Assembly (NCBI RefSeq): GCF_000143415.4
Contig: NW_003314263.1
Coordinates: 1,490,165 to 1,554,164, forward strand
Reading direction: 5' to 3'
Source: Selaginella moellendorffii
Lineage: Eukaryota; Plantae; Lycopodiophyta
Length of the DNA: 64,000 nt
The notes beneath the pieces are model-generated. The model worked only from the letters and a program-made list of their open reading frames with translations, ran no database searches and was not told the origin of the DNA. Of the stretch, positions 21,863-54,678 are shown piece by piece; the first letter of the stretch is position 1; each line of letters starts with the position of its first letter. Position numbers and translations under genes: made by a program.

Positions 21863-22528
21863 TCAAGCGTGCTTCTCATCAGCCTTAACAGCGTCAGTAG
21901 CAACAGCATGGCCACCGTGACCACCGTGGCCACCATGCCCACCATGACCACCTCCTTGAGTCTCAATCGATTCAACACTACCAGCGTGGCTGTGGCCACC
22001 GTGGTGCCATCCAGATCCATACCCCTCCAGCTCCGCATCAGAATGTCCGTGACCACCGCCATACCCACCATGGTAGCCACCACCATAACCACCGTGTCCA
22101 TATCCATATCCTTCCGGCTCAACCGAGTCATGACCACCACGGTAGCCACCATGGTAACCACCACCGTAACCACCGTTTCCATATCCATATCCATGTGGCT
22201 CAACTGAGTCACCGTGGCCATGACCATTGCCGTTGCCACGGTGACCATACCCACCATGGTCCCCATATCCTTGTGGCTCAGCTGCATTAGCGTGGCCACC
22301 ATAGCCACCACGACCACCAGAGCCACCGTGGTAGCCTTCTGTGTCAGCATGGCCGTGGTGACCGCCACCACCATAGCGGGATCCTTCTGGCTCGGCAGAG
22401 TGACCGTGACCACCACCATACCCCTGTGGGTCTAGCGATTCATTCTCTTTCTCTGGGACAACTCTAGCAGAGAATGCGAGGTGGGAGGCACAAAGCAATG
22501 CTGCGAGAACTAGAGAGACGCTCTTCAT
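21863..22528 (-). CDS. Secreted Gly/His/Tyr-rich protein (GRP)
   Basis: Signal peptide MKSVSLVLAALLCASHLAFSA; GYGG/GHGH repeats separated by (A/V)EP(E/Q/H)G motifs; TATA upstream. Confidence 0.9.
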   Translation of the reverse strand: MKSVSLVLAALLCASHLAFSARVVPEKENESLDPQGYGGGHGHSAEPEGSRYGGGGHHGHADTEGYHGGSGGRGGYGGHANAAEPQGYGDHGGYGHRGNGNGHGHGDSVEPHGYGYGNGGYGGGYHGGYRGGHDSVEPEGYGYGHGGYGGGYHGGYGGGHGHSDAELEGYGSGWHHGGHSHAGSVESIETQGGGHGGHGGHGGHGGHAVATDAVKADEKHA

Positions 22529-31126: not shown

Positions 31127-31762
31127 TTAAGCATGCTTTTCATCGACCTTAGCTTCAGTAGCAGCGTGGCCACCGTGACCGCCACCGCCACCACGACCGT
31201 GACCTTGAGTCTCAATCGACTCAGTGGTAGCGCTATGGCCGTGACCGCCACCATACCCACCGCCATATCCACCTTTACCACCGTATCCATATCCCTCCGG
31301 CTCAACCGAGTCAGCGTATCCGTGACCACCGCCATATCCACCATGACCATACCCACCATGGTAGCCTCCGCCATAGCCACCGTTGCCATAGCCACCGCCA
31401 TAACCACCGTTGCCATAGCCACCGCCATAACCACCGTGTCCATATCCATATCCTTCCGGCTCAACTGCGTCTGCGTGACCACGACCACCGCCGTAGCCAC
31501 CACCACGACCACCGCCGTAGCCACCACCATGACCGCCACCGTAGCCACCACGGTATCCTTCCAGCTCCGCCGAGTGACCATGCCCACCGCCGTAGCCACC
31601 GCGACCACCATAGCCACCACCACCGCCGTAGCCACCGTGACCACCACCATACCCCTGTGGGTCTAGCGATTCATTCTCCTCCTTCTCTGGGACAACTCTA
31701 GCAGAGAATGCGAGCTGGGAGGCACAAAGCAATGCAGCGAGAACTAGAGCGACGCTCTTCAT
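31127..31762 (-). CDS. Secreted Gly/Tyr/His-rich protein (GRP paralog)
   Basis: Signal peptide; GGYGGG repeats; VEPEGY/ELEGY motifs; TATA at ~31816. Confidence 0.9.
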   Translation of the reverse strand: MKSVALVLAALLCASQLAFSARVVPEKEENESLDPQGYGGGHGGYGGGGGYGGRGGYGGGHGHSAELEGYRGGYGGGHGGGYGGGRGGGYGGGRGHADAVEPEGYGYGHGGYGGGYGNGGYGGGYGNGGYGGGYHGGYGHGGYGGGHGYADSVEPEGYGYGGKGGYGGGYGGGHGHSATTESIETQGHGRGGGGGHGGHAATEAKVDEKHA

Positions 31763-32119: not shown

Positions 32120-35262
<3,143 letters not shown>

Positions 35263-35778: not shown

Positions 35779-36666
35779 ATGACTCGATTCGCGGCGCCCA
35801 CTCCATCGCCATCGCCATCGCACAAGAAATCGTCAAGATCGTGCGCTGCCGCCGAGAATTCTCCAGCGGCGGGAAAATCTTCGCCCAGGAGGCGAGGGGG
35901 AAGAATGCCGCTCGAGATCTTGGATCACCAGGGCGGCGATCGGTTCGTTAGCGGCCTGGATTTCGATTTCGAGGGCCGGTTTGCCGCCGCGCAGACGAGG
36001 GAATCTTTCCACTCGCGGCGCATGTCCTTGGCGCCGCAGCAGCAGGAGAAAGATCCATCGATCGAGCGGCGCCGGCAGAGAAGGATGTCTCTCCAGGCCG
36101 GATCGATCCACAGGCTTGACAAGAACGGCGCAAAGAAGGCGTCCAAGATCCATCCTAGCGGCGCCATCGCCAAGAACAAGGGTTCCTCGCCTCCTCCAGT
36201 CCTCGTCGACCAGCTCTACATCGAGAAATCCGCTAGCGTTCTCTGGAGGGATGGCTTGCTCCAGCAGTGGGATAATCTCCTCGACAACACCTCTGGAGGA
36301 TTCAAGAGCATCACCGTCGCCTACGAGGAGCACCGGAAGAGCCTGGAGCCAGATCCAAAGCAAGGCGACGATCAAGCACAGATTTCGTCGCCGTGTTCTT
36401 GCGAGGGCGAGACCTCCAGCAGCAAGGACATCCACATGGTGGAAATCTCGTCCGAGGAGTCCGATGTGCCGCGCCTGGACGAGATTTCTCCATTTCCAGA
36501 GAAAGAGCTCGAGCTGGATGATCAAGAACTCAAGCGCAAGGGCGAGGAGCGCACCGGATGGACGAGCTATGCATTCACGGCGGCAGCAGCGCTCGTAGCG
36601 GCCGGCATTGCGATCTTGGGATGCGTCATCCATGGCAAGGTTCGTGCTTGTGTTTCCTCTAGCTAG
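35779..36666 (+). CDS. Hypothetical protein with a C-terminal hydrophobic (tail-anchor-like) segment
   Basis: Long ORF, ATG at 35779; AFTAAAALVAAGIAILGCVI near the C-terminus; 3' end may be spliced. Confidence 0.6.
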   Translation: MTRFAAPTPSPSPSHKKSSRSCAAAENSPAAGKSSPRRRGGRMPLEILDHQGGDRFVSGLDFDFEGRFAAAQTRESFHSRRMSLAPQQQEKDPSIERRRQRRMSLQAGSIHRLDKNGAKKASKIHPSGAIAKNKGSSPPPVLVDQLYIEKSASVLWRDGLLQQWDNLLDNTSGGFKSITVAYEEHRKSLEPDPKQGDDQAQISSPCSCEGETSSSKDIHMVEISSEESDVPRLDEISPFPEKELELDDQELKRKGEERTGWTSYAFTAAAALVAAGIAILGCVIHGKVRACVSSS

Positions 36667-38480
36667 GCGGCAGTGCTTTCTCTCGATCTCCTCGCTACGT
36701 TTCTACCAATCCCACTGTGAAATATCCTTCCCGGATCTCTTGCCGTGCTTGCCAGCAGCACATAGACAGCGCCATTCTTTGGATCAAGCTCAAGAACACG
36801 CCGCGCGGCGTAAGAGCTAGCTTCCAGATCGTCGTGATCGCGGCAAGCTCCAAGAACACACACCCAATTCACCGCTTGCGCCTCGAATGGCATCGTTTCC
36901 GCGAGCTCCCTCGCGGATTCCAGGCGCCCAGCGCGCCCGAGAGCATCGATCATGCATGAGAAATGCTGGTGCGTCGGCGATCGATCGAAATCCAAGCTCA
37001 TCGACACGAACAGGCACCGCGCGTCATACAGTCGGCTCCCAAGAATCGCCGGGACGAAGGAGACCTCGTCGGGGAAATCGACGGTCTTCATCGAATGGAA
37101 GAGCTGGAGGGCCTCATCGAGCCGTCCGTTTTGGCAGTAGCCAGCCAATAGCGCATTCCACGACATGGTACCACGCTCGGGGGAGGTATCCAAAAGATTC
37201 TTAGCATCAGCAAGATGCCCGGCTTGGGCATATGCCACAATCATCGCATTCCAGGACACAAGATTCCGGCATTGCATCTTATGGAATATCCACTCGGCCA
37301 GGTCGAGATGCCCGGCTCGAGCATATTCTCCCAGCAACGCTGTCCATGACACAACGTCTAGGAGGGCTGGGTTTTGGAGAATGTTCTCCATCGCTGCATG
37401 GAGATTCCCGCTGTGGGAATATGCTGGGAGCATTGCAGTCCATGAGATGGAATCGTGCTCTGGCATGCTGTGAAAGATTCTCTCGGATTCTTCAAAGAGG
37501 TAGCTGTTTGTATAGGTGGCGAGCAAGCAAGAGTAGGAGACTCTGTCTTTACAGGGAATCTTCTGGAAAAGATCTGTAGCATCTTTTACAAGACCAGACT
37601 GAGCATATGCCGCAAGGAGTGAATTCCAGCAGACTAGATCCCAACAGGGCATCTTGAGGAGGAGACTCTTGGCTTCATCAAGATGCCCAGACTGGCAATA
37701 TGCCTTTATCATTAAAGTCACCGAGAGAATATCCCTGGCAGGCATCTTTTCAAACAACTCCCGGGCTTTTCTGAGTTTTTTCGCTTGTATGTATGATTCG
37801 AAAAGAGTTGTCCACGATACCAAGCTCCATTCGGGCATTTGGAAGAAGATTCTCTCGGTATTAGAGAGATCCCCAGTTCCGGCATATACTGATAGCATCA
37901 AGTTCCAAGTGATGATATTTCTCTCCGGCATTTGAAAGACGAGCATTTGAGCTTCGCTAAAAAGCTCTAAAACGCAGTAGCACTTAAGAAACGCGTTCCA
38001 AGTTACTAGATTATGCTCGGGCATTGATAGAAAGATACGCCTTGATTCCTCTAGATGCCCTGCTTGGGCATATGCAGTAAGCATGGATGTCCAAAGAACA
38101 AGATCTCTTTGCGGGATTTCGTCCAGAATTTTCTTAGCCTGTGCGAGAGATCCACTCTTCACGTACGCGACGAGCATAGTCGTCCACAGTATGAGATTCT
38201 TCCCTTGGATTTGATCAAAGAGCTGCTGGGCGCTGTTGATCTTGCCGCTCTTGCAGTAGCCGGAGAGAAGGTGGTAGTAGGAAAAAGAGGATGGGTTTTC
38301 CATGGAGTCGAGAACCTCCCTCGCGCGCTCGAGGCTCCCCAGCGTCGCGTACATCTCGATGAGCTTGTCGTGGAGGAATGCATCGTGTCCGAGCAGCGGT
38401 TTGATGCGCTGGTGGATTCGCAGCGCGGTGGCGATGGTGGAGCAGTCCTGGATTTGCTGGATGCAAAAGCTTCTCTCCAT
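36663..38480 (-). CDS. PLS-class PPR protein with E-type extension (organellar RNA-editing factor type)
   Basis: Many PPR repeats (…MPxRNLVSWN…), C-terminal HFSCMIDALGRAG...GACR...YVLLAS; ORF is open upstream to 38786, start uncertain. Confidence 0.9.
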   Translation of the reverse strand: MERSFCIQQIQDCSTIATALRIHQRIKPLLGHDAFLHDKLIEMYATLGSLERAREVLDSMENPSSFSYYHLLSGYCKSGKINSAQQLFDQIQGKNLILWTTMLVAYVKSGSLAQAKKILDEIPQRDLVLWTSMLTAYAQAGHLEESRRIFLSMPEHNLVTWNAFLKCYCVLELFSEAQMLVFQMPERNIITWNLMLSVYAGTGDLSNTERIFFQMPEWSLVSWTTLFESYIQAKKLRKARELFEKMPARDILSVTLMIKAYCQSGHLDEAKSLLLKMPCWDLVCWNSLLAAYAQSGLVKDATDLFQKIPCKDRVSYSCLLATYTNSYLFEESERIFHSMPEHDSISWTAMLPAYSHSGNLHAAMENILQNPALLDVVSWTALLGEYARAGHLDLAEWIFHKMQCRNLVSWNAMIVAYAQAGHLADAKNLLDTSPERGTMSWNALLAGYCQNGRLDEALQLFHSMKTVDFPDEVSFVPAILGSRLYDARCLFVSMSLDFDRSPTHQHFSCMIDALGRAGRLESARELAETMPFEAQAVNWVCVLGACRDHDDLEASSYAARRVLELDPKNGAVYVLLASTARDPGRIFHSGIGRNVARRSRESTAA

Positions 38481-39027
38481 TGAAGACCTTTGGTAGCATT
38501 TGCGTAAGAGAGAAGAGAGAATCTTTCGAAACGTATTGTGCGCGAAACTTAGTCGCCCAAAACGGTAAAAAAGAAAAATGCCACCTTGGTTTCTGGATCG
38601 AGCAACCAACCAGATCAAGATAAGACGCCGCGCGAACACCGCCCAGGCTCTCTCGCGAATTACTGCGCTGCAATCACCTATCCATGCCTTTAAATGCATG
38701 CACAGATTTCCTGGGTTCTGGGAGCGCGGCGGTCTCGCTTCCATCGAGGAGAAATGGGAGCACCGAACGAATCCCCGAAAGGCCAAGCCAAGCCAAGAAA
38801 AAAAAAAAGAGAGAAAGAAACGAGGAGAGAGGAGAGGAGAGGATCAAAGTTCTTCAAAGAATCAAATCGTGCTCGTTGTAATGGAGCTTTCATGTTTAGA
38901 GCTTTGATAATAGAGTTACAGACAACACCAAAGACATGGAGGAATCAAACTGTACAAAGGGGAAGAACAGTAGCCACCGCCGCTGGGCTTTGGAGGCTGT
39001 GTTTCTTCGCGGATCGATCTTTCTCCA

Positions 39028-39483
39028 TCAGGGATTGAAATCGTAGATGTAGTCGACGTGGTCCTGCTGCTGATGATCCGGATGATCACGCGGCGACGCG
39101 GTGAGCTTCTATGGAAGAAATCAAGCGTTAAAAACAAGTAAATCACTCCACCCCAAGTGAATCTCACCTCAGTTTTTCCACCGGCCACAGCACTCGCGGA
39201 CGCTACCGCGTTGACACTCTTGTCATTCACCACTGAAACAAAACAAAAGAGATCTCTACATGAGCGATTTGCAAGACAAAGTAGCCATGAAACAACGAGC
39301 GTTCATGCAAAGCCATGCACTTCTTTCTCCATAGCTAAAAACTCATCTCAAAGCTTACACACGCGAAGAAACAGATAGTGTATGGAGCTAGAGCTAGAGC
39401 TTGCCTGTGGAGTCCTTGACAGGCCTGGCAGCCATAGCAGCGGCCACGAACAGCACAAAGAAGAAGAAAACGAGGCGAGACAT
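39028..39483 (-). CDS. Phytosulfokine-like secreted peptide precursor, 74 aa (exons 39483-39405, 39232-39168, 39108-39028)
   Basis: Spliced product MSRLVFFFFVLFVAAAMAARPVKDSTVVNDKSVNAVASASAVAGGKTEKLTASPRDHPDHQQQDHVDYIYDFNP*; GC-AG intron 1, GT-AG intron 2, frame preserved; TATA at ~39670. Confidence 0.75.
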
Positions 39484-40019
39484 GATACAATCGATCAAAA
39501 GCTTGCGAAATCTTTGCAGAGACTCGGAGAAACTCTTTGGAGCTGCGCTAGAGATCTAGAGCAATGAAACAAGTTTGCCGAGAAAGAAAAAGAGCTTCCA
39601 AAGACTAGCTTTCGAGCGAGCAAAGAGGCGAAAAGAGAGATGGAGGACGAAAGACGACGGCGGCGCCGGTGTATATATACGGCTCCAACAAAGAGACACG
39701 GCGTGGACGGATAGGATGCGATCAAGGAAGACAAGGCCTGCAAGTGCGACACGTGGACAGCATTGACCAGACAGAATGCTGACTAGGAAGAAGCCACAAA
39801 TCCAAACTAGATAAAATAGAAACCATGGAAGAACTCTCTCCATTAATTTTGCGTTGTTTCCAAAGAGAGAGCATGTCCCCCGAAATCTTTTATTTCATTT
39901 CATCCAATCTTGGAAGTTTCAACTATAGAGACTGTGATCCTCTCAAGAATGCTTGATATACACAGTGAGTTCTCCCAGAGATATCCAATCTATAAACTAT
40001 CTCTACGCAAAGATTTACG

Positions 40020-43000
40020 TTACGCTGCTATGGTACCTTCGGTCTCCTGTGGCATGCCTTTGATGGTTCTTCGCTTCCATATCGCCGACTTTGGATCGAA
40101 CGCCAATTCCCATGTTGGCCAGTAGTGCAAATCCTGCTTGAGCGTCAAAACCCGTGGCTTGCCGTTCAAATGGACCACTTTGACGCGCACAAAGTCTCCA
40201 TGGTTGAGTTCCTACAAAAAGAAAACAATATCAAGATCGCTACTATCGCACTAAACCCAAATGCCAAACCTTGACAACTTCGATAAACGTTTGCAAGTCC
40301 GGTGTCTTGTTCCCATTCACTTCCACGATCCATTGAAGAGCATAAAGGCCATATCTGTGAGCGGGACTTCCATGGCACCACCTGACAATCACGAATATCA
40401 ACCAAATGAGGCACTGCTAAAAATGAAAGAGTTTTGCCAAGTTACCTGGCAACGTAAACTCCATGGCCCTCTTCCGGGAGAAAGCCCAGTGCTCTTACAG
40501 CCGGATGAGGATCTTGGACGACGCAGCCTGCCCAGTTCACCATTTGCATCGTGCCAAAACCATCGCGGACGTCCGTTCCAATCACAATCTCTACTTCGAC
40601 ACCCTGATGGTAGCGAGAGATTTAAGACAAAAGTAGCAGAGGTTTTGCGTTACCTGTCGAAAGACGGTCATGTGTAGTTCGTCAGTTTCGCCCTCTTCAG
40701 CACGTTGGCAGGCTTGCTCAACGTCTTGAAAGCAAGTTATAGGCATGTTGTTGATTGCCAGTAACATATCGCTTTGCTCGAGTGCAGACTCCGCCTTAGA
40801 GCCCGCTAAACAGCCTTTGACCCGCAACACTTGACGTCTTATTGGATCTTTTTTAGCTAGAGCCTGCAATTCTTGTGTCAGTAAACACAAAACTGAAAAG
40901 AAGTGTTCGCTTACCTGAACCCATTTATCGCTAAGACCAAAGCTCCTTGCTTTTGACAACAAGGTCGGATAGAGCTCAACTTCCAGAACGCGAACCAGGG
41001 GCATACGTCTCTCAATACCGTTGATATGTAAAGGTGGTCCTCGGTGTCCATCGACAATCCCGTCGCGTATTTCACTGATGTACGATATTGGAATGCCTCG
41101 AACGAACTGGTGATCTTCCGGAGAGCTGTCGCCGTATTTAACCTGCTTATTGATGGATTATAAACATGAGCCATAAACCCTTTGTTCTTACTTGAGTTGA
41201 GAAGCTAGCCCAAAGAGCTTGTACTCTCCCTTCGTCGTCGGCAAGAACTCCCGAAAACGTATGGCCAAAATCTGAGGGATCAAACTTAACGTGAGAAGAT
41301 TGTGAAGACTACAACATACCAGTATCAATCTCAACAACTTCCATGTTCATTGCTCGATATCGTGGACAATCTGCTGCCCCCACATTCAGCGAAGCGGCAG
41401 GGTTGGTCACTACTGACTTGCGTGACGTAGCCTGCATGCTCCTGCTCAGACCAACTAGGTGAACGGCATCACCTCTTTTCAGTGGTTCTGCAGATAAACG
41501 TGTCTAAGATGCTTAGGTAACGGCAAAAGAAAGCTACAAACCCGGGTGTAAGACAGCAGCTCGGACGGCGGCTGCTCCAGCTTCTCCTAGAGCCGACGGA
41601 TTATAAGCAACAACCGCAAAGTCGTGTATTGGATGTAAAAACACCACCTAAGTAGCGGAGTCAGCAGATTGAAAGCTATTTCAAGATTACCTCAGCAGGA
41701 ATCTCGATTGGAATTGCGGCAAAAGAAAGCATTATATCGGCAACTGAAATTGCGACAGTGTTTCTGTCCACGGCTATAAGGCCCAAGTCGGAGGAGTGAT
41801 GTATAATGATCCCTGTACCAAAGAAGTGCTGGGCATGCACGCCATCGAGTAGTGAAGACGGTGGAATATGAACCTGCATCACTAAAAGCGTCTCAACAAC
41901 GCCAAAACGAAAATCCGCTTTCTTACCTCCATCATAACGAGAGTCGGCTCTAAAACCTGCTCAACACCTGAAGCACCACCTGTTACTTCTGGAGTTTGAG
42001 AATCAACAACTTCCGCAAGAATGTCAGGCTGATTATCTTCCGGAACAGCTAGAAGCTCGTTCACTCGTCTTCTCTTAGTTTCTCCTTGGTTCAAAGACCC
42101 GTCGCTCAGCTGGTTGCCTTCGTCACTTTGGAAGCCATCTTCGGCGCTCATTGAAACCGCAACTCCTCCTCTACATTCGATAGCAGAACCGTCTTGTAAA
42201 GCACCTGACATCTTGCATGGTCCCTGCTTCTCGTCACTATGAAAAGTTGAAACAGGTTTACTGGATATGGCCGGACGAGGATTCCAAAGTCCGGTAGAAT
42301 CATCACGAACATAGATTTGCGGAGGTGCATACCATTCGTGCCTTTCAATGGTCACCAGCACAGACTAGAGAAAACAAAATCCTTTAAGACGAGCAGGACG
42401 TCAAATATATGTAAAAGGCTCACCTTGCCTCTATGCCGATCGCTGTACACATAGAATTCTAGTGGGACACGCGCACCAGGGGCAAGCTTACCAAAACCGA
42501 CAATAAGATCTTCCAAGGTTGAAATGCTTTCTCCAGCAAGCTTTTTGATTATCCCAAACTTTGGAACCCCTGCTCGCGACAGCATGTACCTTCAAGAGAA
42601 AAAAGCTTAGCGATACAACTCTCACGTAATCGTGCTTACCCCGGATCTGCGACATATACAAGTCCACAGTTAAAGCGAAAATTCCGAGCCTGTAAGTCCA
42701 CGTGCATTATTGGCACAACAGTTCAACAAGCCAACGAACCTGTTGATAAGACAGAGGATGGATAATGGCTCCACTCATTTCTAAAAAGTAATTAGGCGTG
42801 ATTGAATGTAAGTCTTGCACCTGCTTCCAACTTCAGCATTTGACAGTTAAAGGAATATTTACACATACCTTCAACGTGACTTGAACATCTTTTCCACCTC
42901 TCTCGAGTTCGAGCTCCACGTCTTTGTCAACGTTGTCGTCAAGGAGTATTTCAAGTTTTAAAAACTGTGTTACTACCTGTCCCATTCTAAGTGTTAGCGA

Positions 43001-44465
43001 GTTTTCATTACTTCACAAAACCCTTACTTCTTTGTTCACGCGAACAAGCACATCTCCAGGCTCCAGGTGCTTATGAGAAGGACCACCCGGCACCTGATTT
43101 CAAAAACGTCGGACGATATACTTACATGGTATGTTTAAGAACTTACCACAGAATCTACGACGAGCATGCCGGTTTCACTCGGAGGAGAAGCAGATCGAAC
43201 AGTCTAAGGTGAAGCGAACTTGTTAATCAAGATCAAACAAAGAAGAAAAACTTACTTGCTCAGTGTCATGCCGCAAGCCCAGACGTCTGGTTTCATCAAA
43301 TCCTTTGTGCAGCAATGTCATCTTAAGAGAAAAACACATAGTTAATTATGTGACCTTTTCTCAATGAAGTCATTCACCTGCAAAGTCCCCCGAGGTATAT
43401 CCACTGGTTGCCACCCATCACCAAATCCATCTTTGCTTTCCTGAAGAACACGGAGTGCTCTTACCACCTGACAGAATGTAGACAGTAAGACTTAACCAGG
43501 AAACAGAAACTCGTTTAGTCTTACACGATCCAGAGGAAGAAAATACGCCGAAGCCCCTGCTACTTTGCTACCAGCATTTATAGCGACGGCCCTTCCTTTG
43601 CAATCTACAACAGGAGATCCACTAGATCCTCCTTTAGTTCCTGACGCTGCCTGGCAAAATTCACGTTATAAAAACCTCAGTCAGTTGATTGTCGATCACC
43701 AATTACCTGCATATAGAATGTGTTGAAATCGTTGTATCCATCCCTTTAGAACATAGAATTATGAACAACAAAGTTCTCAGACTGAAGATTCTTACTTTTT
43801 ATACGGTGGAGCATCTCGATCAAGCCTGGCAATGGTACCCGCAAGTATGGAGAGCTGAAAGAAAGAAAATGCCAGTTAGTACCAAGCTAAGGTTTCTAGT
43901 ATTTGTTTTGTTTTCGCGAAAGTACCTTTTCTCCGCTATCATTCCCCACAACACGAATTTCTAGACCCACAGCCGCGGCCTCTGGAGCGAGAGGAATCTC
44001 CTCGTAGTTCATAAACTCGACGCTCTTTGGATCGAATCGAAAGAACCCAAAGTCGTGTACCTGGATCCAATCCAAAAACAACGTAAACCACGCTTTCCAA
44101 AAGAGAGGAACCAACTTACAGGATCGCGATACAAAGGATACACCGGAATTTCTTCCCTGTTGAGAAAGATCGCCTCCGCAACCACGGGACCTATAGCCGG
44201 AATCCCTCAAACAAGCTCCCTACATTGAAAATTGGAGATTACCAGGCTTCACGACATGGCGATTGGTGAGAATTATGCTCCGGGCCTTGTCCACCACGAA
44301 TCCCGTCGCATAGCCGGAGCTCGCAGTCTCCGTATCGAATGCCCTGCAAGCGGTCGTCCTGAGCACCACGACGCCGCGGACGACGCGAGCGAGCGATTTC
44401 TGCCAATCCTCGGCAGTGGCTCCGCTGCTGCCAGCGCCTTCCAGAGGCAAGCCATCGAGCTCCAT
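40020..44465 (-). CDS. DEG7: Deg/HtrA serine protease of the DEG7/Nma111 type (two protease domains plus PDZ), multi-exon
   Basis: [49 protein letters not shown]-terminal [11 protein letters not shown]. Confidence 0.92.
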
Positions 44466-52911: not shown

Positions 52912-54678
52912 TCAAAGTCGAAGTTTTGGGGAATTCTTCAAGTCCCATTCGCTCGCGTGTTGGAGAATGTTGGCCATGAGCACGTACGCAGCTGAGTTGC
53001 AAGGATCGAGCTCCAGTATGCTTCCGTAAGCGGCCCGACCAACGTCGACGTTTTTCCACTTGTGACAGGCGCCGAGAACACTCATCCACAAGCTTGGTGT
53101 GGGCGAGGCACCGGACATCCCCCTCAGTACTGCCACTGCTTCGTCGAGAAGGTTAGCTCGGCCTAGAAGGTCCACCAAGCAGCTATAGTGCTCGATCCCT
53201 GGAGTGATACTGCGCTGCGTCATAGCTCTAAACACCTCCTTCCCGTTCTCCACAAGTCCGGCGTGTGCACACGCTGTGAGAACCGTAAGATAGGTGACCG
53301 AGTCCGGAGCTAAACTCGTCCGGCACAGAGCTTCGAATGCTTCCAGCACTTCTTTCATCTCCCCTTGTTGGCTATAGCCTGCTAGCAGCGCGTTCCAAGT
53401 TACCAAGTCGATGCTTGCCATGGACTCGAAAACTTGCCGCGCTCGATTCATACTTCCAGACTTCCCGTACAAATCCACCAGAGAAGTTGCGACTCCCGGC
53501 TGGCCCTCTACTCCAGCAGTGCATATCTTGGCATGAATTCTCCTCCCAGCTCCGGAAAAACCTTGGCTTGCGCAAGCCTTGAGCACGGCCACAAAAGTTG
53601 CTGGATTCGGAGCGCAGCCATCACCCTCCATTTTCTCAAAGAGCTCTAGCGCCATCTCTGCTTCTCCACCTTGTGCATAGCCCAGAATCATCGCCGACCA
53701 CGAAACCACGTCTCGGAAAGACCTCTTCATCCTCTGGAAAATGCTCCAAGCCTCTCCCAGGCTTCCACACTTGCAGTACATATCCACGAGAGAGCTCGCG
53801 ATCGAAGCATGGAGCTCGAATCCAGAGCCTCGAATCTGACAGTGCAAAGCTCGCCCGATCTCCAAGCTCTTGAGCTTCACCACCTTTCCATCCACAAGCT
53901 CGCCTTCGTCGACCACCGCTAGAGCCGCGCAAGCTTTGATCACTGCGAGGTAAGTCACTCGGTTTGGAGCGCAAGGCATCCTCCGGAAAGTTTCTAGCGC
54001 CAACTTTGCATCGCCAGCCTCGGCAAATCCCAAGATCATCGCACTCCACGAGACGACGTTGCGTTCTTCCATTCTTCCAAACAAATCCCGGGCATCCACC
54101 GAGCTCCCACACTTCCAGTACAGATCCACCAGCGTGCTGGCCACGAACAAGTCCGATTCCAATCCGTGCTGGCAGATCTCCAAGTGAAGAGCTCGAGCGG
54201 TTTCGAGTGCCTGTTCTCGAGAGTTCTCGCAAGTCGCGGCACAAGCCTTGAGAGCCGCCAAGTAAGTGACGCGATTTGGAGCGATGGAATCGTCGCTGTC
54301 TTGCTTCATTCTCTGGAAGAGTCCTAGTGCCAAATCCCCTTCCCCATTCTCGGCGTAGCCCAGGATCATCGCACTCCAAGACACCACAGAGCGATCTTCC
54401 ATGGCATCGAAAACCTCGCGAGCCTCGTCGATGCTGCGGCATTTCGCATACATAGTGACCAGGGCGCTCGCAATGTCGGCGTCGATGCCATCGTCGCCAT
54501 CGAAGCCCGGCGATGCCCGGCGATTCTTGACGATGTAATCGTGGATTCGCTTACCGGACTGGAGATCCCCGACGCGGCCGCACGCCTTGAGCGCTGCCGC
54601 GATGATGGATTTCGCCGGGGAGGAGCCCTCGCTTTGAATCCGGTCGAAGGCGTGGATTGAATCCCTCGCGCTGCGCAT
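52912..54678 (-). CDS. PLS-class PPR protein with E domain
   Basis: 588-aa ORF, PPR repeats, HYSCLVDLLGRA...LGAC...YVLMANI. Confidence 0.9.
   Translation of the reverse strand: MRSARDSIHAFDRIQSEGSSPAKSIIAAALKACGRVGDLQSGKRIHDYIVKNRRASPGFDGDDGIDADIASALVTMYAKCRSIDEAREVFDAMEDRSVVSWSAMILGYAENGEGDLALGLFQRMKQDSDDSIAPNRVTYLAALKACAATCENSREQALETARALHLEICQHGLESDLFVASTLVDLYWKCGSSVDARDLFGRMEERNVVSWSAMILGFAEAGDAKLALETFRRMPCAPNRVTYLAVIKACAALAVVDEGELVDGKVVKLKSLEIGRALHCQIRGSGFELHASIASSLVDMYCKCGSLGEAWSIFQRMKRSFRDVVSWSAMILGYAQGGEAEMALELFEKMEGDGCAPNPATFVAVLKACASQGFSGAGRRIHAKICTAGVEGQPGVATSLVDLYGKSGSMNRARQVFESMASIDLVTWNALLAGYSQQGEMKEVLEAFEALCRTSLAPDSVTYLTVLTACAHAGLVENGKEVFRAMTQRSITPGIEHYSCLVDLLGRANLLDEAVAVLRGMSGASPTPSLWMSVLGACHKWKNVDVGRAAYGSILELDPCNSAAYVLMANILQHASEWDLKNSPKLRL

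What the first reader, a model, noticed from the sequence alone, without database searches (positions are those of the whole stretch)
39028..39483. Hidden phytosulfokine-like gene with a YIYDF core and a GC-AG intron
Seen: not in the ORF track. Three exons splice in frame (CAG|GCAAGC donor, then a GT-AG intron) to a 74-aa protein with a signal peptide ending AARP and a C-terminus HVDYIYDFNP. Established: PSK precursors end in H(L/T/V)DYIYTQ..P, where the D before Y supports tyrosine sulfation and processing. Here TQ is replaced by DF and the usual Cys/RR segment is missing. Inference: a divergent sulfated peptide hormone that gene callers could easily miss.
Basis: partly seen in the sequence, partly recalled or inferred. 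Interest (0 to 1): 0.8.

Follow-up and report, generated by a model that had tools for sequence, protein, structure and literature searches.

The report
Spikemoss phytosulfokine-like secreted peptide gene
A tiny three-exon gene of the spikemoss Selaginella moellendorffii, merged with its neighbour in the gene call on record, encodes a small secreted protein ending in a close look-alike of the plant growth hormone phytosulfokine. That hormone is reported only from seed plants; expression, sulfation and activity of this copy were not shown here.

Summary
On the minus strand, exons 39483-39405, 39232-39168 and 39108-39028 join in frame through a GC-AG and a GT-AG intron. They give a 74-residue product with a signal-peptide-like start and the C-terminus HVDYIYDFNP.

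The window is Selaginella moellendorffii, scaffold GL377567.1.

This is more than a chance ORF:
- All three exons score like coding sequence in exactly the predicted frames. Each lies in the top 1-4% of stop-free windows outside gene calls.
- Exons are GC-rich; introns are T-rich.
- Only 3 of 999 ATG starts in the window look like signal peptides.
- The leader has a TATA box and no ATG.

The gene call on record starts at the same ATG but runs into the neighbouring PPR reading frame (786 residues). It cannot use the DYIYDF frame, and that reading scores as non-coding.

The best reading is a divergent phytosulfokine-like precursor: the conserved H-x-D-Y-I-Y is present, T-Q is replaced by D-F, and there is no Cys or dibasic segment.

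The joined protein was not searched, by rule.

The scan noted at least seven look-alike genes elsewhere in this genome. I did not re-test them.

The parts
39673..39679 (-). TATA-like box (TATATAT) about 190 nt upstream of the start codon
   Evidence: sequence
39484..39645 (-). Putative 5' leader. It has no ATG anywhere between 39700 and 39484. The transcription start is not mapped, so the upstream limit is a guess.
39405..39483 (-). Exon 1: start codon, one basic residue, a 16-residue hydrophobic core and A-M-A|A-R-P. This is a signal peptide plus the first propeptide residues. It ends in phase 1.
   Evidence: codon-usage score +0.31 to +0.36 bits per codon in this frame only
39233..39404 (-). 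Intron 1, 172 nt, GC-AG (CAG|GCAAGC ... TTTGTTTCAG|). GC 0.42, T 0.38.
   Evidence: It is the only good phase-1 donor in exon 1.
39168..39232 (-). Exon 2: variable Ala/Ser/Val-rich propeptide segment
   Evidence: +0.43 bits per codon in this frame; both other frames contain stops
39109..39167 (-). Intron 2, 59 nt, GT-AG (GAG|GTGAGA ... TTCTTCCATAG|). GC 0.39, T 0.42.
39028..39108 (-). Exon 3 coding part: acidic/His-rich propeptide tail, the motif, and the TGA stop
   Evidence: +0.31 to +0.33 bits per codon, against negative scores in the other two frames
39031..39060 (-). C-terminal motif H-V-D-Y-I-Y-D-F-N-P. The proposed sulfated core is Y-I-Y-D-F or shorter.
   Evidence: compared with the H-x-D-YIYTQ of seed-plant precursors described in PMC2667306 and PMC13157962
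36663..38786 (-). Neighbouring PPR reading frame. It is not part of the peptide gene, but the 786-residue gene call on record fuses it to the peptide gene. Its own first ATG is at 38744, preceded by 22- and 26-nt pyrimidine tracts at 38843-38795.

Best explanation
This is an intact nuclear gene of Selaginella moellendorffii for a 74-residue secreted pre-propeptide. It belongs to a spikemoss group of phytosulfokine-like precursors whose only strongly constrained part is the C-terminal H-[V/I]-D-Y-I-Y-D-[F/V]-x-P.

Shown here: the exon structure, the reading frames, coding-like codon usage in all three exons, a signal-peptide-like N-terminus, and the motif.

Inferred by analogy with seed-plant phytosulfokine:
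1. The signal peptide is removed in the ER.
2. Tyrosylprotein sulfotransferase sulfates the tyrosines in the Golgi. Y1 has the required Asp at -1, and further acidic residues sit at -4, -9, -12 and directly after Y3.
3. Asp-dependent subtilases trim the propeptide in the apoplast. The site V-D|Y-I resembles the phytaspase site D|YIYTQ.
4. The short disulfated peptide (YIYDF, or YIYD / YIY if the second Asp is also used as a cleavage mark) is sensed by a leucine-rich-repeat receptor kinase of the phytosulfokine-receptor type.

The 786-residue gene call on record that fuses this gene to the PPR frame is most likely an annotation error.
For: Model and frames.

Organism and position. The PPR at 52915-54678 is an exact product on GCA_000143415.2 scaffold GL377567.1, and window w equals record 1490164+w.

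Coding signal:
- In each exon the predicted frame has the only positive codon-usage score (+8.1, +9.0, +8.7 bits). That is 0.31-0.44 bits per codon, against 0.22 +/- 0.16 for true coding windows and about -0.3 off frame.
- Each exon lies in the top 4%, 3% and 1% of stop-free 26-codon windows outside gene calls.
- Exons are 0.56-0.57 GC. Introns are 0.39-0.42 GC and T-rich.

Start of the gene: TATA box, a leader free of ATG, and a signal-peptide-like N-terminus that only 3 of 999 open ATG starts in the window share.

Splicing: the GC donor is one of only two phase-1 GT/GC sites in exon 1, and the only one with a donor-like context.

Against the fused call:
- No 786-residue solution keeps both introns.
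- The read-through frame scores -0.10 bits per codon.
- The candidate 288-nt intron has weak donors and purine-rich acceptors.
- The PPR frame has its own ATG behind long pyrimidine tracts.

Literature:
- H-x-D before YIYTQ is conserved (PMC2667306; AHTD|YIYTQ in PMC13157962).
- Asp before Tyr is required for sulfation, and nearby acidic residues help (PMC6698702).
- Phytaspase cuts D|YIYTQ, and SBT3.8 cuts before an Asp at P1' (PMC13082318).
- The sulfotransferase gene is present in S. moellendorffii (PMC8462819).

Leads not tested here: at least seven look-alike loci in this genome, several reported as transcribed and spliced.
Against:
- No protein containing exon 2 exists in the 5.8-billion-protein collection within 58-184 residues. 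However, the neighbouring 707-codon PPR frame is absent from it too, so coverage of this locus is poor.
- Pfam finds nothing in the exon pieces.
- Positions 4-5 (D-F) lie outside all natural plant variants, which change only positions 2 and 5 (PMC10796568; PMC13081851).
- There is no dibasic pair 8-10 residues upstream and no Cys.
- At 74 residues it is below the usual 80-120.
- The stop codon lies only 283 nt from the PPR ATG, which leaves little room for a 3' UTR plus a promoter.
- No relative outside this genome was seen, and the joined protein could not be searched.
Confidence: 0.52

Rival explanations
1. It is a real secreted-peptide gene, but the resemblance to phytosulfokine is convergent or superficial. 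The product would be a lineage-specific peptide with another receptor or another role, possibly not sulfated at all.
For: Only six to seven residues (H-x-D-Y-I-Y) match. Pfam gives no hit. The dibasic and Cys features are absent (PMC2667306). D-F lies outside all known plant variants. Reviews report no PSK outside seed plants (PMC10796568; PMC13074997).
Against: The match covers exactly the residues that are functionally defined in phytosulfokine: Asp for sulfation and cleavage, His at -3, and the Tyr-Ile-Tyr core. It sits at the same place, a few residues from the C-terminus of a short signal-peptide precursor with a two-to-three-exon gene. Precursors of true PSKs share little else with each other either (PMC10796568).
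Confidence: 0.23
2. It is an intact-looking but silent or decaying copy of the family: a young unexpressed paralog.
For: No expression evidence was obtained here. Another copy in this genome was reported without RNA support (note s1-433146; untested). The gene is squeezed between a DEG7-like protease gene ending at 40020 and a PPR frame.
Against: The start codon, both introns' splice sites, the frame, the stop, the TATA box and the ATG-free leader are all intact. Codon usage is still coding-like in all three exons.
Confidence: 0.13
3. The exons are the N-terminal part of a long PPR protein, as in the 786-residue gene call on record for the GenBank assembly.
For:: a gene call spans 39483-36663, starts at the same ATG and ends at the PPR stop. 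Solutions of exactly 786 residues exist that keep intron 1 and add one 288-nt intron.
Against: Such a model must retain the well-formed 59-nt intron 2. It must read 83 codons that score as non-coding (-0.10 bits per codon). It must use weak donors (CAT|GTCTTT, ACA|GTTTGA, TTT|GTACAG) with purine-rich acceptors, and it splices out the PPR frame's own ATG. A cleavable hydrophobic signal peptide does not fit an organelle-targeted PPR protein (general knowledge). No near-identical protein is present in the large collection.
Confidence: 0.07
4. It is a chance arrangement of an ORF start, splice-like sites and a DYIY motif in non-coding DNA.
For: DYIY occurs by chance elsewhere in the window (+9509). 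Thousands of in-frame splice combinations are possible in this stretch.
Against: Three separate exons each fall in the top 1-4% for coding-like codon usage in the predicted frame. There is an exon/intron composition contrast, a rare signal-peptide-like start (3 of 999), a TATA box and an ATG-free leader.
Confidence: 0.05

Closest known systems
Phytosulfokine (PSK) precursors of seed plants (PSK-alpha YIYTQ; legume variants YVYTQ, YIYTN, YVYTN)
   Same: Short secreted precursor with an N-terminal signal peptide. The peptide lies a few residues from the C-terminus. Asp comes directly before the first Tyr and His sits at -3. The core is Tyr-Ile-Tyr. The flank is acidic. The gene has two to three exons.
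   Different: Positions 4-5 are Asp-Phe instead of Thr-Gln/Asn. There is no dibasic pair 8-10 residues upstream and no Cys. It has 74 residues instead of 80-120. Pfam gives no hit on the exon pieces. The host is a lycophyte, where reviews report no PSK.
PSK-like mimics of root-knot nematodes, theta (DYIYDN) and omega (DYVYDN) classes (preprint PMC13081851)
   Same: They carry the same Thr-to-Asp change right after the second Tyr (D-Y-I-Y-D). [quoted passage not shown] The precursor layout is the same: signal peptide, variable propeptide, C-terminal motif.
   Different: They are animal genes. Their last residue is Asn, not Phe, and some end in an amidation signal. No evolutionary link is implied by the data here.
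Putative bryophyte PSK-like sequences (Marchantia YIYTSQ, Physcomitrium; PMC8462819)
   Same: They are candidate PSK relatives outside seed plants, found by motif search and not by family models.
   Different: They lack the Asp before the first Tyr, whereas this gene has it. They keep Thr at position 4, whereas this gene does not.
Other tyrosine-sulfated plant peptides (PSY, RGF/GLV/CLEL, CIF/TWS1)
   Same: Secreted precursors with a DY sulfation site near the C-terminus.
   Different: Their mature peptides run 13-21 residues beyond DY and have conserved Pro/His/Asn positions. Here only six residues follow DY, and there is a second Tyr at +2 as in PSK.

Membership tests
Phytosulfokine precursor (PSK; Pfam PF06404) | N-terminal signal peptide for the secretory pathway | tested here: met
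   Exon 1 has one basic residue, a 16-residue hydrophobic run (mean Kyte-Doolittle 2.8) and small residues at -3/-1. This is a crude rule, not SignalP.
Phytosulfokine precursor (PSK; Pfam PF06404) | Disulfated pentapeptide core Y-[I/V]-Y-T-[Q/N] close to the C-terminus | tested here: not met
   The core is Y-I-Y-D-F, two residues from the stop. Positions 1-3 match and positions 4-5 do not. Known plant variants change only positions 2 and 5 (PMC10796568; PMC13081851).
Phytosulfokine precursor (PSK; Pfam PF06404) | Invariant Asp directly before the first Tyr, with conserved His at -3 (H-x-D) | tested here: met
   H-V-D-Y. Conservation is described in PMC2667306 and PMC10796568.
Phytosulfokine precursor (PSK; Pfam PF06404) | Conserved dibasic residues 8-10 positions upstream of the peptide | tested here: not met
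   The upstream residues are P-D-H-Q-Q-Q-D-H-V-D. The only basic residue in exon 3 near the motif is a single Arg at -13. The feature is described in PMC2667306.
Phytosulfokine precursor (PSK; Pfam PF06404) | Precursor of about 80-120 residues from a gene of two to three exons | tested here: inconclusive
   Three exons fit (PMC7734187). At 74 residues it is slightly below the quoted range (PMC10796568).
Phytosulfokine precursor (PSK; Pfam PF06404) | Significant match to the family profile | tested here: inconclusive
   No Pfam family reached E <= 10 for any of the three exon pieces. Pieces of 21-26 residues give the profile little to score, and the joined protein was not submitted, by rule.
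Phytosulfokine precursor (PSK; Pfam PF06404) | Tyrosine sulfation by TPST, and perception by a PSKR-type receptor | not testable with these tools
   Only the sequence context (DY plus acidic flank) and the reported presence of TPST in S. moellendorffii (PMC8462819) are available.
PSY / RGF / CIF-TWS1 sulfated peptides | A mature peptide of 13-21 residues starting at DY, with conserved Pro/His/Asn positions downstream | tested here: not met
   Only I-Y-D-F-N-P follows DY before the stop.

The most novel reading that the evidence does not exclude
Selaginella carries a true, ancient branch of the phytosulfokine system whose constrained unit is D-YIY-D. Asp-dependent subtilases would cut on both sides: after the first Asp like phytaspases, and before the second like SBT3.8. 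This would release a disulfated tri- or tetrapeptide, the minimal active core of the hormone. It would mean that PSK signalling arose at or before the origin of vascular plants, not in seed plants. It would also mean that the 'nematode-specific' DY[I/V]YD mimic classes have a natural plant counterpart.
Probability: 0.25. Interest if true: 0.8.

Novelty: new variant of a known kind. Interest (0 to 1): 0.58.

Why it matters
Reviews state that no phytosulfokine has been found outside seed plants (PMC10796568) or that it arose in gymnosperms (PMC13074997). The bryophyte candidates lack the key Asp (PMC8462819).

A lycophyte gene family that keeps H-x-D-Y-I-Y but changes the last two residues would matter in three ways:
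- It would move the origin of this hormone type back to early vascular plants.
- It would show which residues are the ancient core.
- It would give a directly testable set of peptides (sulfated YIY, YIYD, YIYDF) for receptor and growth assays.

It also shows a concrete annotation failure. A mini-gene with a GC-AG intron was absorbed into a neighbouring PPR model, which suggests that peptide-hormone inventories of non-seed plants are undercounted.

Tried and rejected

2. Pfam on the three exon pieces found nothing.

3. Word search with the 105-residue ORF that holds exon 2 in frame gave 0 hits at E <= 10. An identical 21-residue stretch should have scored, so no protein carrying exon 2 in that frame within 58-184 residues is in that collection. 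The neighbouring PPR frame is missing from it too, so this says little about expression.

4. Exon 3 could not be searched usefully.
- It is closed by TAG at the acceptor and by TGA, leaving 26 residues.
- That is below the 30-residue floor of the big search.
- In the word search it would see only 14-45-residue proteins.
- The big search and the last word search were therefore left unused.

That step is left out.

6. Allele on the second haplotype: scaffold GL377662.1 is collinear. The target lies 13 kb from the nearest single-exon gene on record. The other single-exon genes are on record only for this haplotype, so the allelic DNA was out of reach.

7. The exact structure of the 786-residue call could not be recovered. 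7173 models with up to three introns fit. Two brute-force scripts timed out.

8. A metagenome scan for a back-translated HVDYIYDFNP found 0 matches.

9. Paper search for YIYDF / DYIYDF found no relevant paper.

10. No transposon-like repeats flank the gene.

11. Look-up of the scan's notes by sequence was blank.

12. The claim that the tripeptide YIY is the active core of PSK could not be found in the held papers. It is used only as my recollection of Matsubayashi et al. 1996.

Full report
**Where this is.**
A PPR reading frame of the window (52915-54678, minus strand) is an exact product on GenBank assembly GCA_000143415.2 of Selaginella moellendorffii, scaffold GL377567.1. Window position w corresponds to record position 1490164+w. 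A second scaffold, GL377662.1, carries the collinear other haplotype with the same run of genes: PPR, TPX2, DEG7-like protease.

**The observation.**
- Exon 1 is 39483-39405, 79 nt.
- Intron 1 is 172 nt, with donor CAG|GCAAGC and a pyrimidine-rich CAG acceptor.
- Exon 2 is 39232-39168, 65 nt.
- Intron 2 is 59 nt, with donor GAG|GTGAGA and acceptor TTCTTCCATAG|.
- Exon 3 is 39108-39028 and ends in TGA.

Because 79+65 = 144, exon 3 is entered in phase 0. The product has 26+1+21+26 = 74 residues and ends H-V-D-Y-I-Y-D-F-N-P. None of the three pieces contains Cys or a dibasic pair. I checked the frame by arithmetic and exon by exon. That step is left out of this report.

**Is it more than chance?**
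The motif alone is not. DYIY also occurs in an obviously non-coding frame at +9509. 'Splices in frame' is cheap too: thousands of in-frame GT/GC-AG combinations exist in this stretch. The following tests carry the weight.

1. Codon usage. I trained it on Pfam-supported reading frames of the same window.
   - The score is positive only in the predicted frame of each exon: +8.1, +9.0 and +8.7 bits.
   - That is 0.31-0.44 bits per codon. True coding windows give 0.22 +/- 0.16, and off-frame windows about -0.3.
   - Introns, leader and 3' flank score near zero or below.

2. A null that allows for the selection of open frames. Among stop-free 26-codon windows outside all gene calls, only 4%, 3% and 1% reach the three exon scores. 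A GC-matched null gives the same picture.

3. Composition. Exons are 0.56-0.57 GC. Introns are 0.39-0.42 GC with 38-42% T, the usual plant contrast.

4. The start of the gene.
   - A crude signal-peptide rule is passed by only 3 of 999 ATGs with at least 22 open codons, and this ATG is one of them.
   - A TATA-like box lies at 39679.
   - There is no ATG between 39700 and the start codon.

5. Splicing. Exon 2 is open in one frame only. Exon 1 offers just two phase-1 GT/GC sites, and CAG|GCAAGC is the only one with a donor-like context. The unusual GC donor is therefore forced by the frames, not chosen for convenience.

Together these make a chance arrangement very unlikely.

**What the record says.**
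The gene calls held for the GenBank assembly show a 786-residue product. It spans exactly 39483-36663: it starts at this same ATG and ends at the stop of the neighbouring 707-codon PPR frame. So the locus is not empty in that record. The mini-gene has been absorbed into its neighbour.

No 786-residue solution can keep both introns, because exon 3 in the DYIYDF frame ends in a stop. The solutions that keep intron 1 add one 288-nt intron and read straight through intron 2. That reading has several problems.
- It scores -0.10 bits per codon over 83 codons.
- Its candidate donors are weak (CAT|GTCTTT, ACA|GTTTGA, TTT|GTACAG).
- Its acceptors are purine-rich.
- It would splice out the PPR frame's own first ATG (38744), which sits 50-100 nt behind two pyrimidine tracts of 22 and 26 nt.

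A hydrophobic secretory signal on a PPR protein is also implausible (general knowledge). I therefore read the fused call as an error, with residual probability 0.07. I could not recover its exact exon structure.

**What could not be obtained.**

Sequence searches were also limited.
- A word search with the 105-residue ORF that contains exon 2 in frame found nothing.
- The same collection also lacks any near-identical copy of the adjacent PPR frame; its best hit is 34% identical. Its silence on this locus therefore means little.
- Pfam finds nothing in pieces of 21-26 residues.
- Exon 3 is closed by the TAG of its own acceptor and by TGA. The motif-bearing piece is thus only 26 residues by reference, too short for the large search and, in the word search, blind to full-length relatives. 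I left those searches unused rather than spend them on uninformative queries.
- The allele on GL377662.1 lies beyond the reach of any single-exon gene on record.
- A metagenome scan for the back-translated motif found nothing.

**What it most likely is.**
The match to phytosulfokine precursors covers the residues that have a defined job in that family.
- Asp directly before Tyr is required for sulfation, and nearby acidic residues help (PMC6698702). Here Asp sits at -1, -4, -9 and -12, and directly after the second Tyr.
- H-x-D before the peptide is conserved among PSK precursors (PMC2667306; AHTD|YIYTQ in PMC13157962).
- The precursor layout fits: signal peptide, variable propeptide, peptide close to the C-terminus. 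The two-to-three-exon gene also fits (PMC10796568; PMC7734187).
- Processing is plausible. Tomato phytaspase cuts D|YIYTQ and prefers hydrophobic residues at P2 and P2' (PMC13082318). Here the site would be V-D|Y-I.
- The sulfotransferase gene is reported in S. moellendorffii (PMC8462819).

The differences are real.
- Positions 4-5 are Asp-Phe, whereas natural plant variants change only positions 2 and 5.
- The dibasic pair 8-10 residues upstream is missing.
- There is no Cys.
- The precursor is slightly short.

For these reasons I do not file it as a proven member of the PSK family, but as a PSK-like variant.

**Two points from the literature sharpen the picture.**
First, a 2026 preprint on nematode PSK mimics describes classes DYIYDN and DYVYDN. 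[quoted passage not shown] This plant gene has exactly that change.

Second, SBT3.8 cuts the C-terminal side of PSK1 only when Asp is at P1' (PMC13082318). In D-Y-I-Y-D-F the second Asp could play that role. The mature product might then be YIY or YIYD rather than YIYDF. By my recollection of Matsubayashi et al. 1996, the sulfated tripeptide retains part of the activity. I could not confirm this in the held papers, so it is a lead only.

**Earlier notes of this scan.**
A word look-up lists at least seven other places in this same genome with three-exon mini-genes ending DYIYDF(N/S)P or HIDYIYDVDP. Follow-up agents reported several of them as transcribed and spliced as predicted, and reported the motif unchanged between copies.

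I could not fetch that DNA, so these notes are untested leads here, not support. If they hold, they exclude chance and point to a conserved unit H-[V/I]-D-Y-I-Y-D. The organism named in note s1-434257 was confirmed independently.

**Verdict.**
- The gene is very probably real and wrongly merged with its neighbour in the record.
- Its product is best read as a divergent phytosulfokine-like secreted peptide precursor.
- Expression of this copy, sulfation, the mature form and the receptor are all unproven.
- Given published statements that PSK is confined to seed plants (PMC10796568; PMC13074997), a lycophyte family of this kind is of real but moderate interest. It is a new variant of a known kind, and this locus is one more member of a set the scan has already met.

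Noticed in passing
window 36663-39483 (-): The gene call on record for GCA_000143415.2 is a 786-residue product that starts at the peptide gene's ATG and ends at the PPR stop. It is most likely a fusion artefact. Its exact exon structure could not be recovered.
   Followed up: partly
window 36663-38786 (-): This 707-codon PPR reading frame has no near-identical protein in the 5.8-billion-protein collection; the best hits are 29-34% identical Selaginella and seed-plant PPRs. It also has no DYW end. It seems not to be annotated as a gene of its own. The 93-nt periodic direct repeats at 37831-38118 reflect its repeat units.
   Followed up: partly
window 38795-38843 (-): Two long pyrimidine tracts (22 and 26 nt) lie 50-100 nt upstream of the PPR frame's first ATG. 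They resemble a plant pyrimidine-patch core promoter, only about 190 nt below the peptide gene's stop codon.
   Followed up: no
window 40020-44465 (-): A DEG7-like protease gene (1069 residues, Trypsin_2 plus PDZ domains) ends 537 nt upstream of the peptide gene's ATG. The same 1069-residue call exists on the other haplotype.
   Followed up: no
window 32120-35262 (-): An EDR1/CTR1-like Raf-type kinase gene (826 residues) whose first exon is a 340-codon open frame.
   Followed up: no
window 9509 (+): A second DYIY in the six-frame translation. It has no His at -3, no nearby stop and no gene context. It is a useful reminder that the tetrapeptide alone occurs by chance.
   Followed up: yes
L003 17001-18683 (-) (scaffold GL377662.1): The other haplotype carries a 297-residue gene call between the TPX2 and DEG7-like genes. 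It has no counterpart call in this haplotype (compare L001).
   Followed up: no
window 31127-31762 (-) and 21863-22528 (-): Two single-exon gene calls (211 and 221 residues) have no Pfam match. They are on record only for this haplotype, and the 211-residue sequence is absent from the large protein collection.
   Followed up: no
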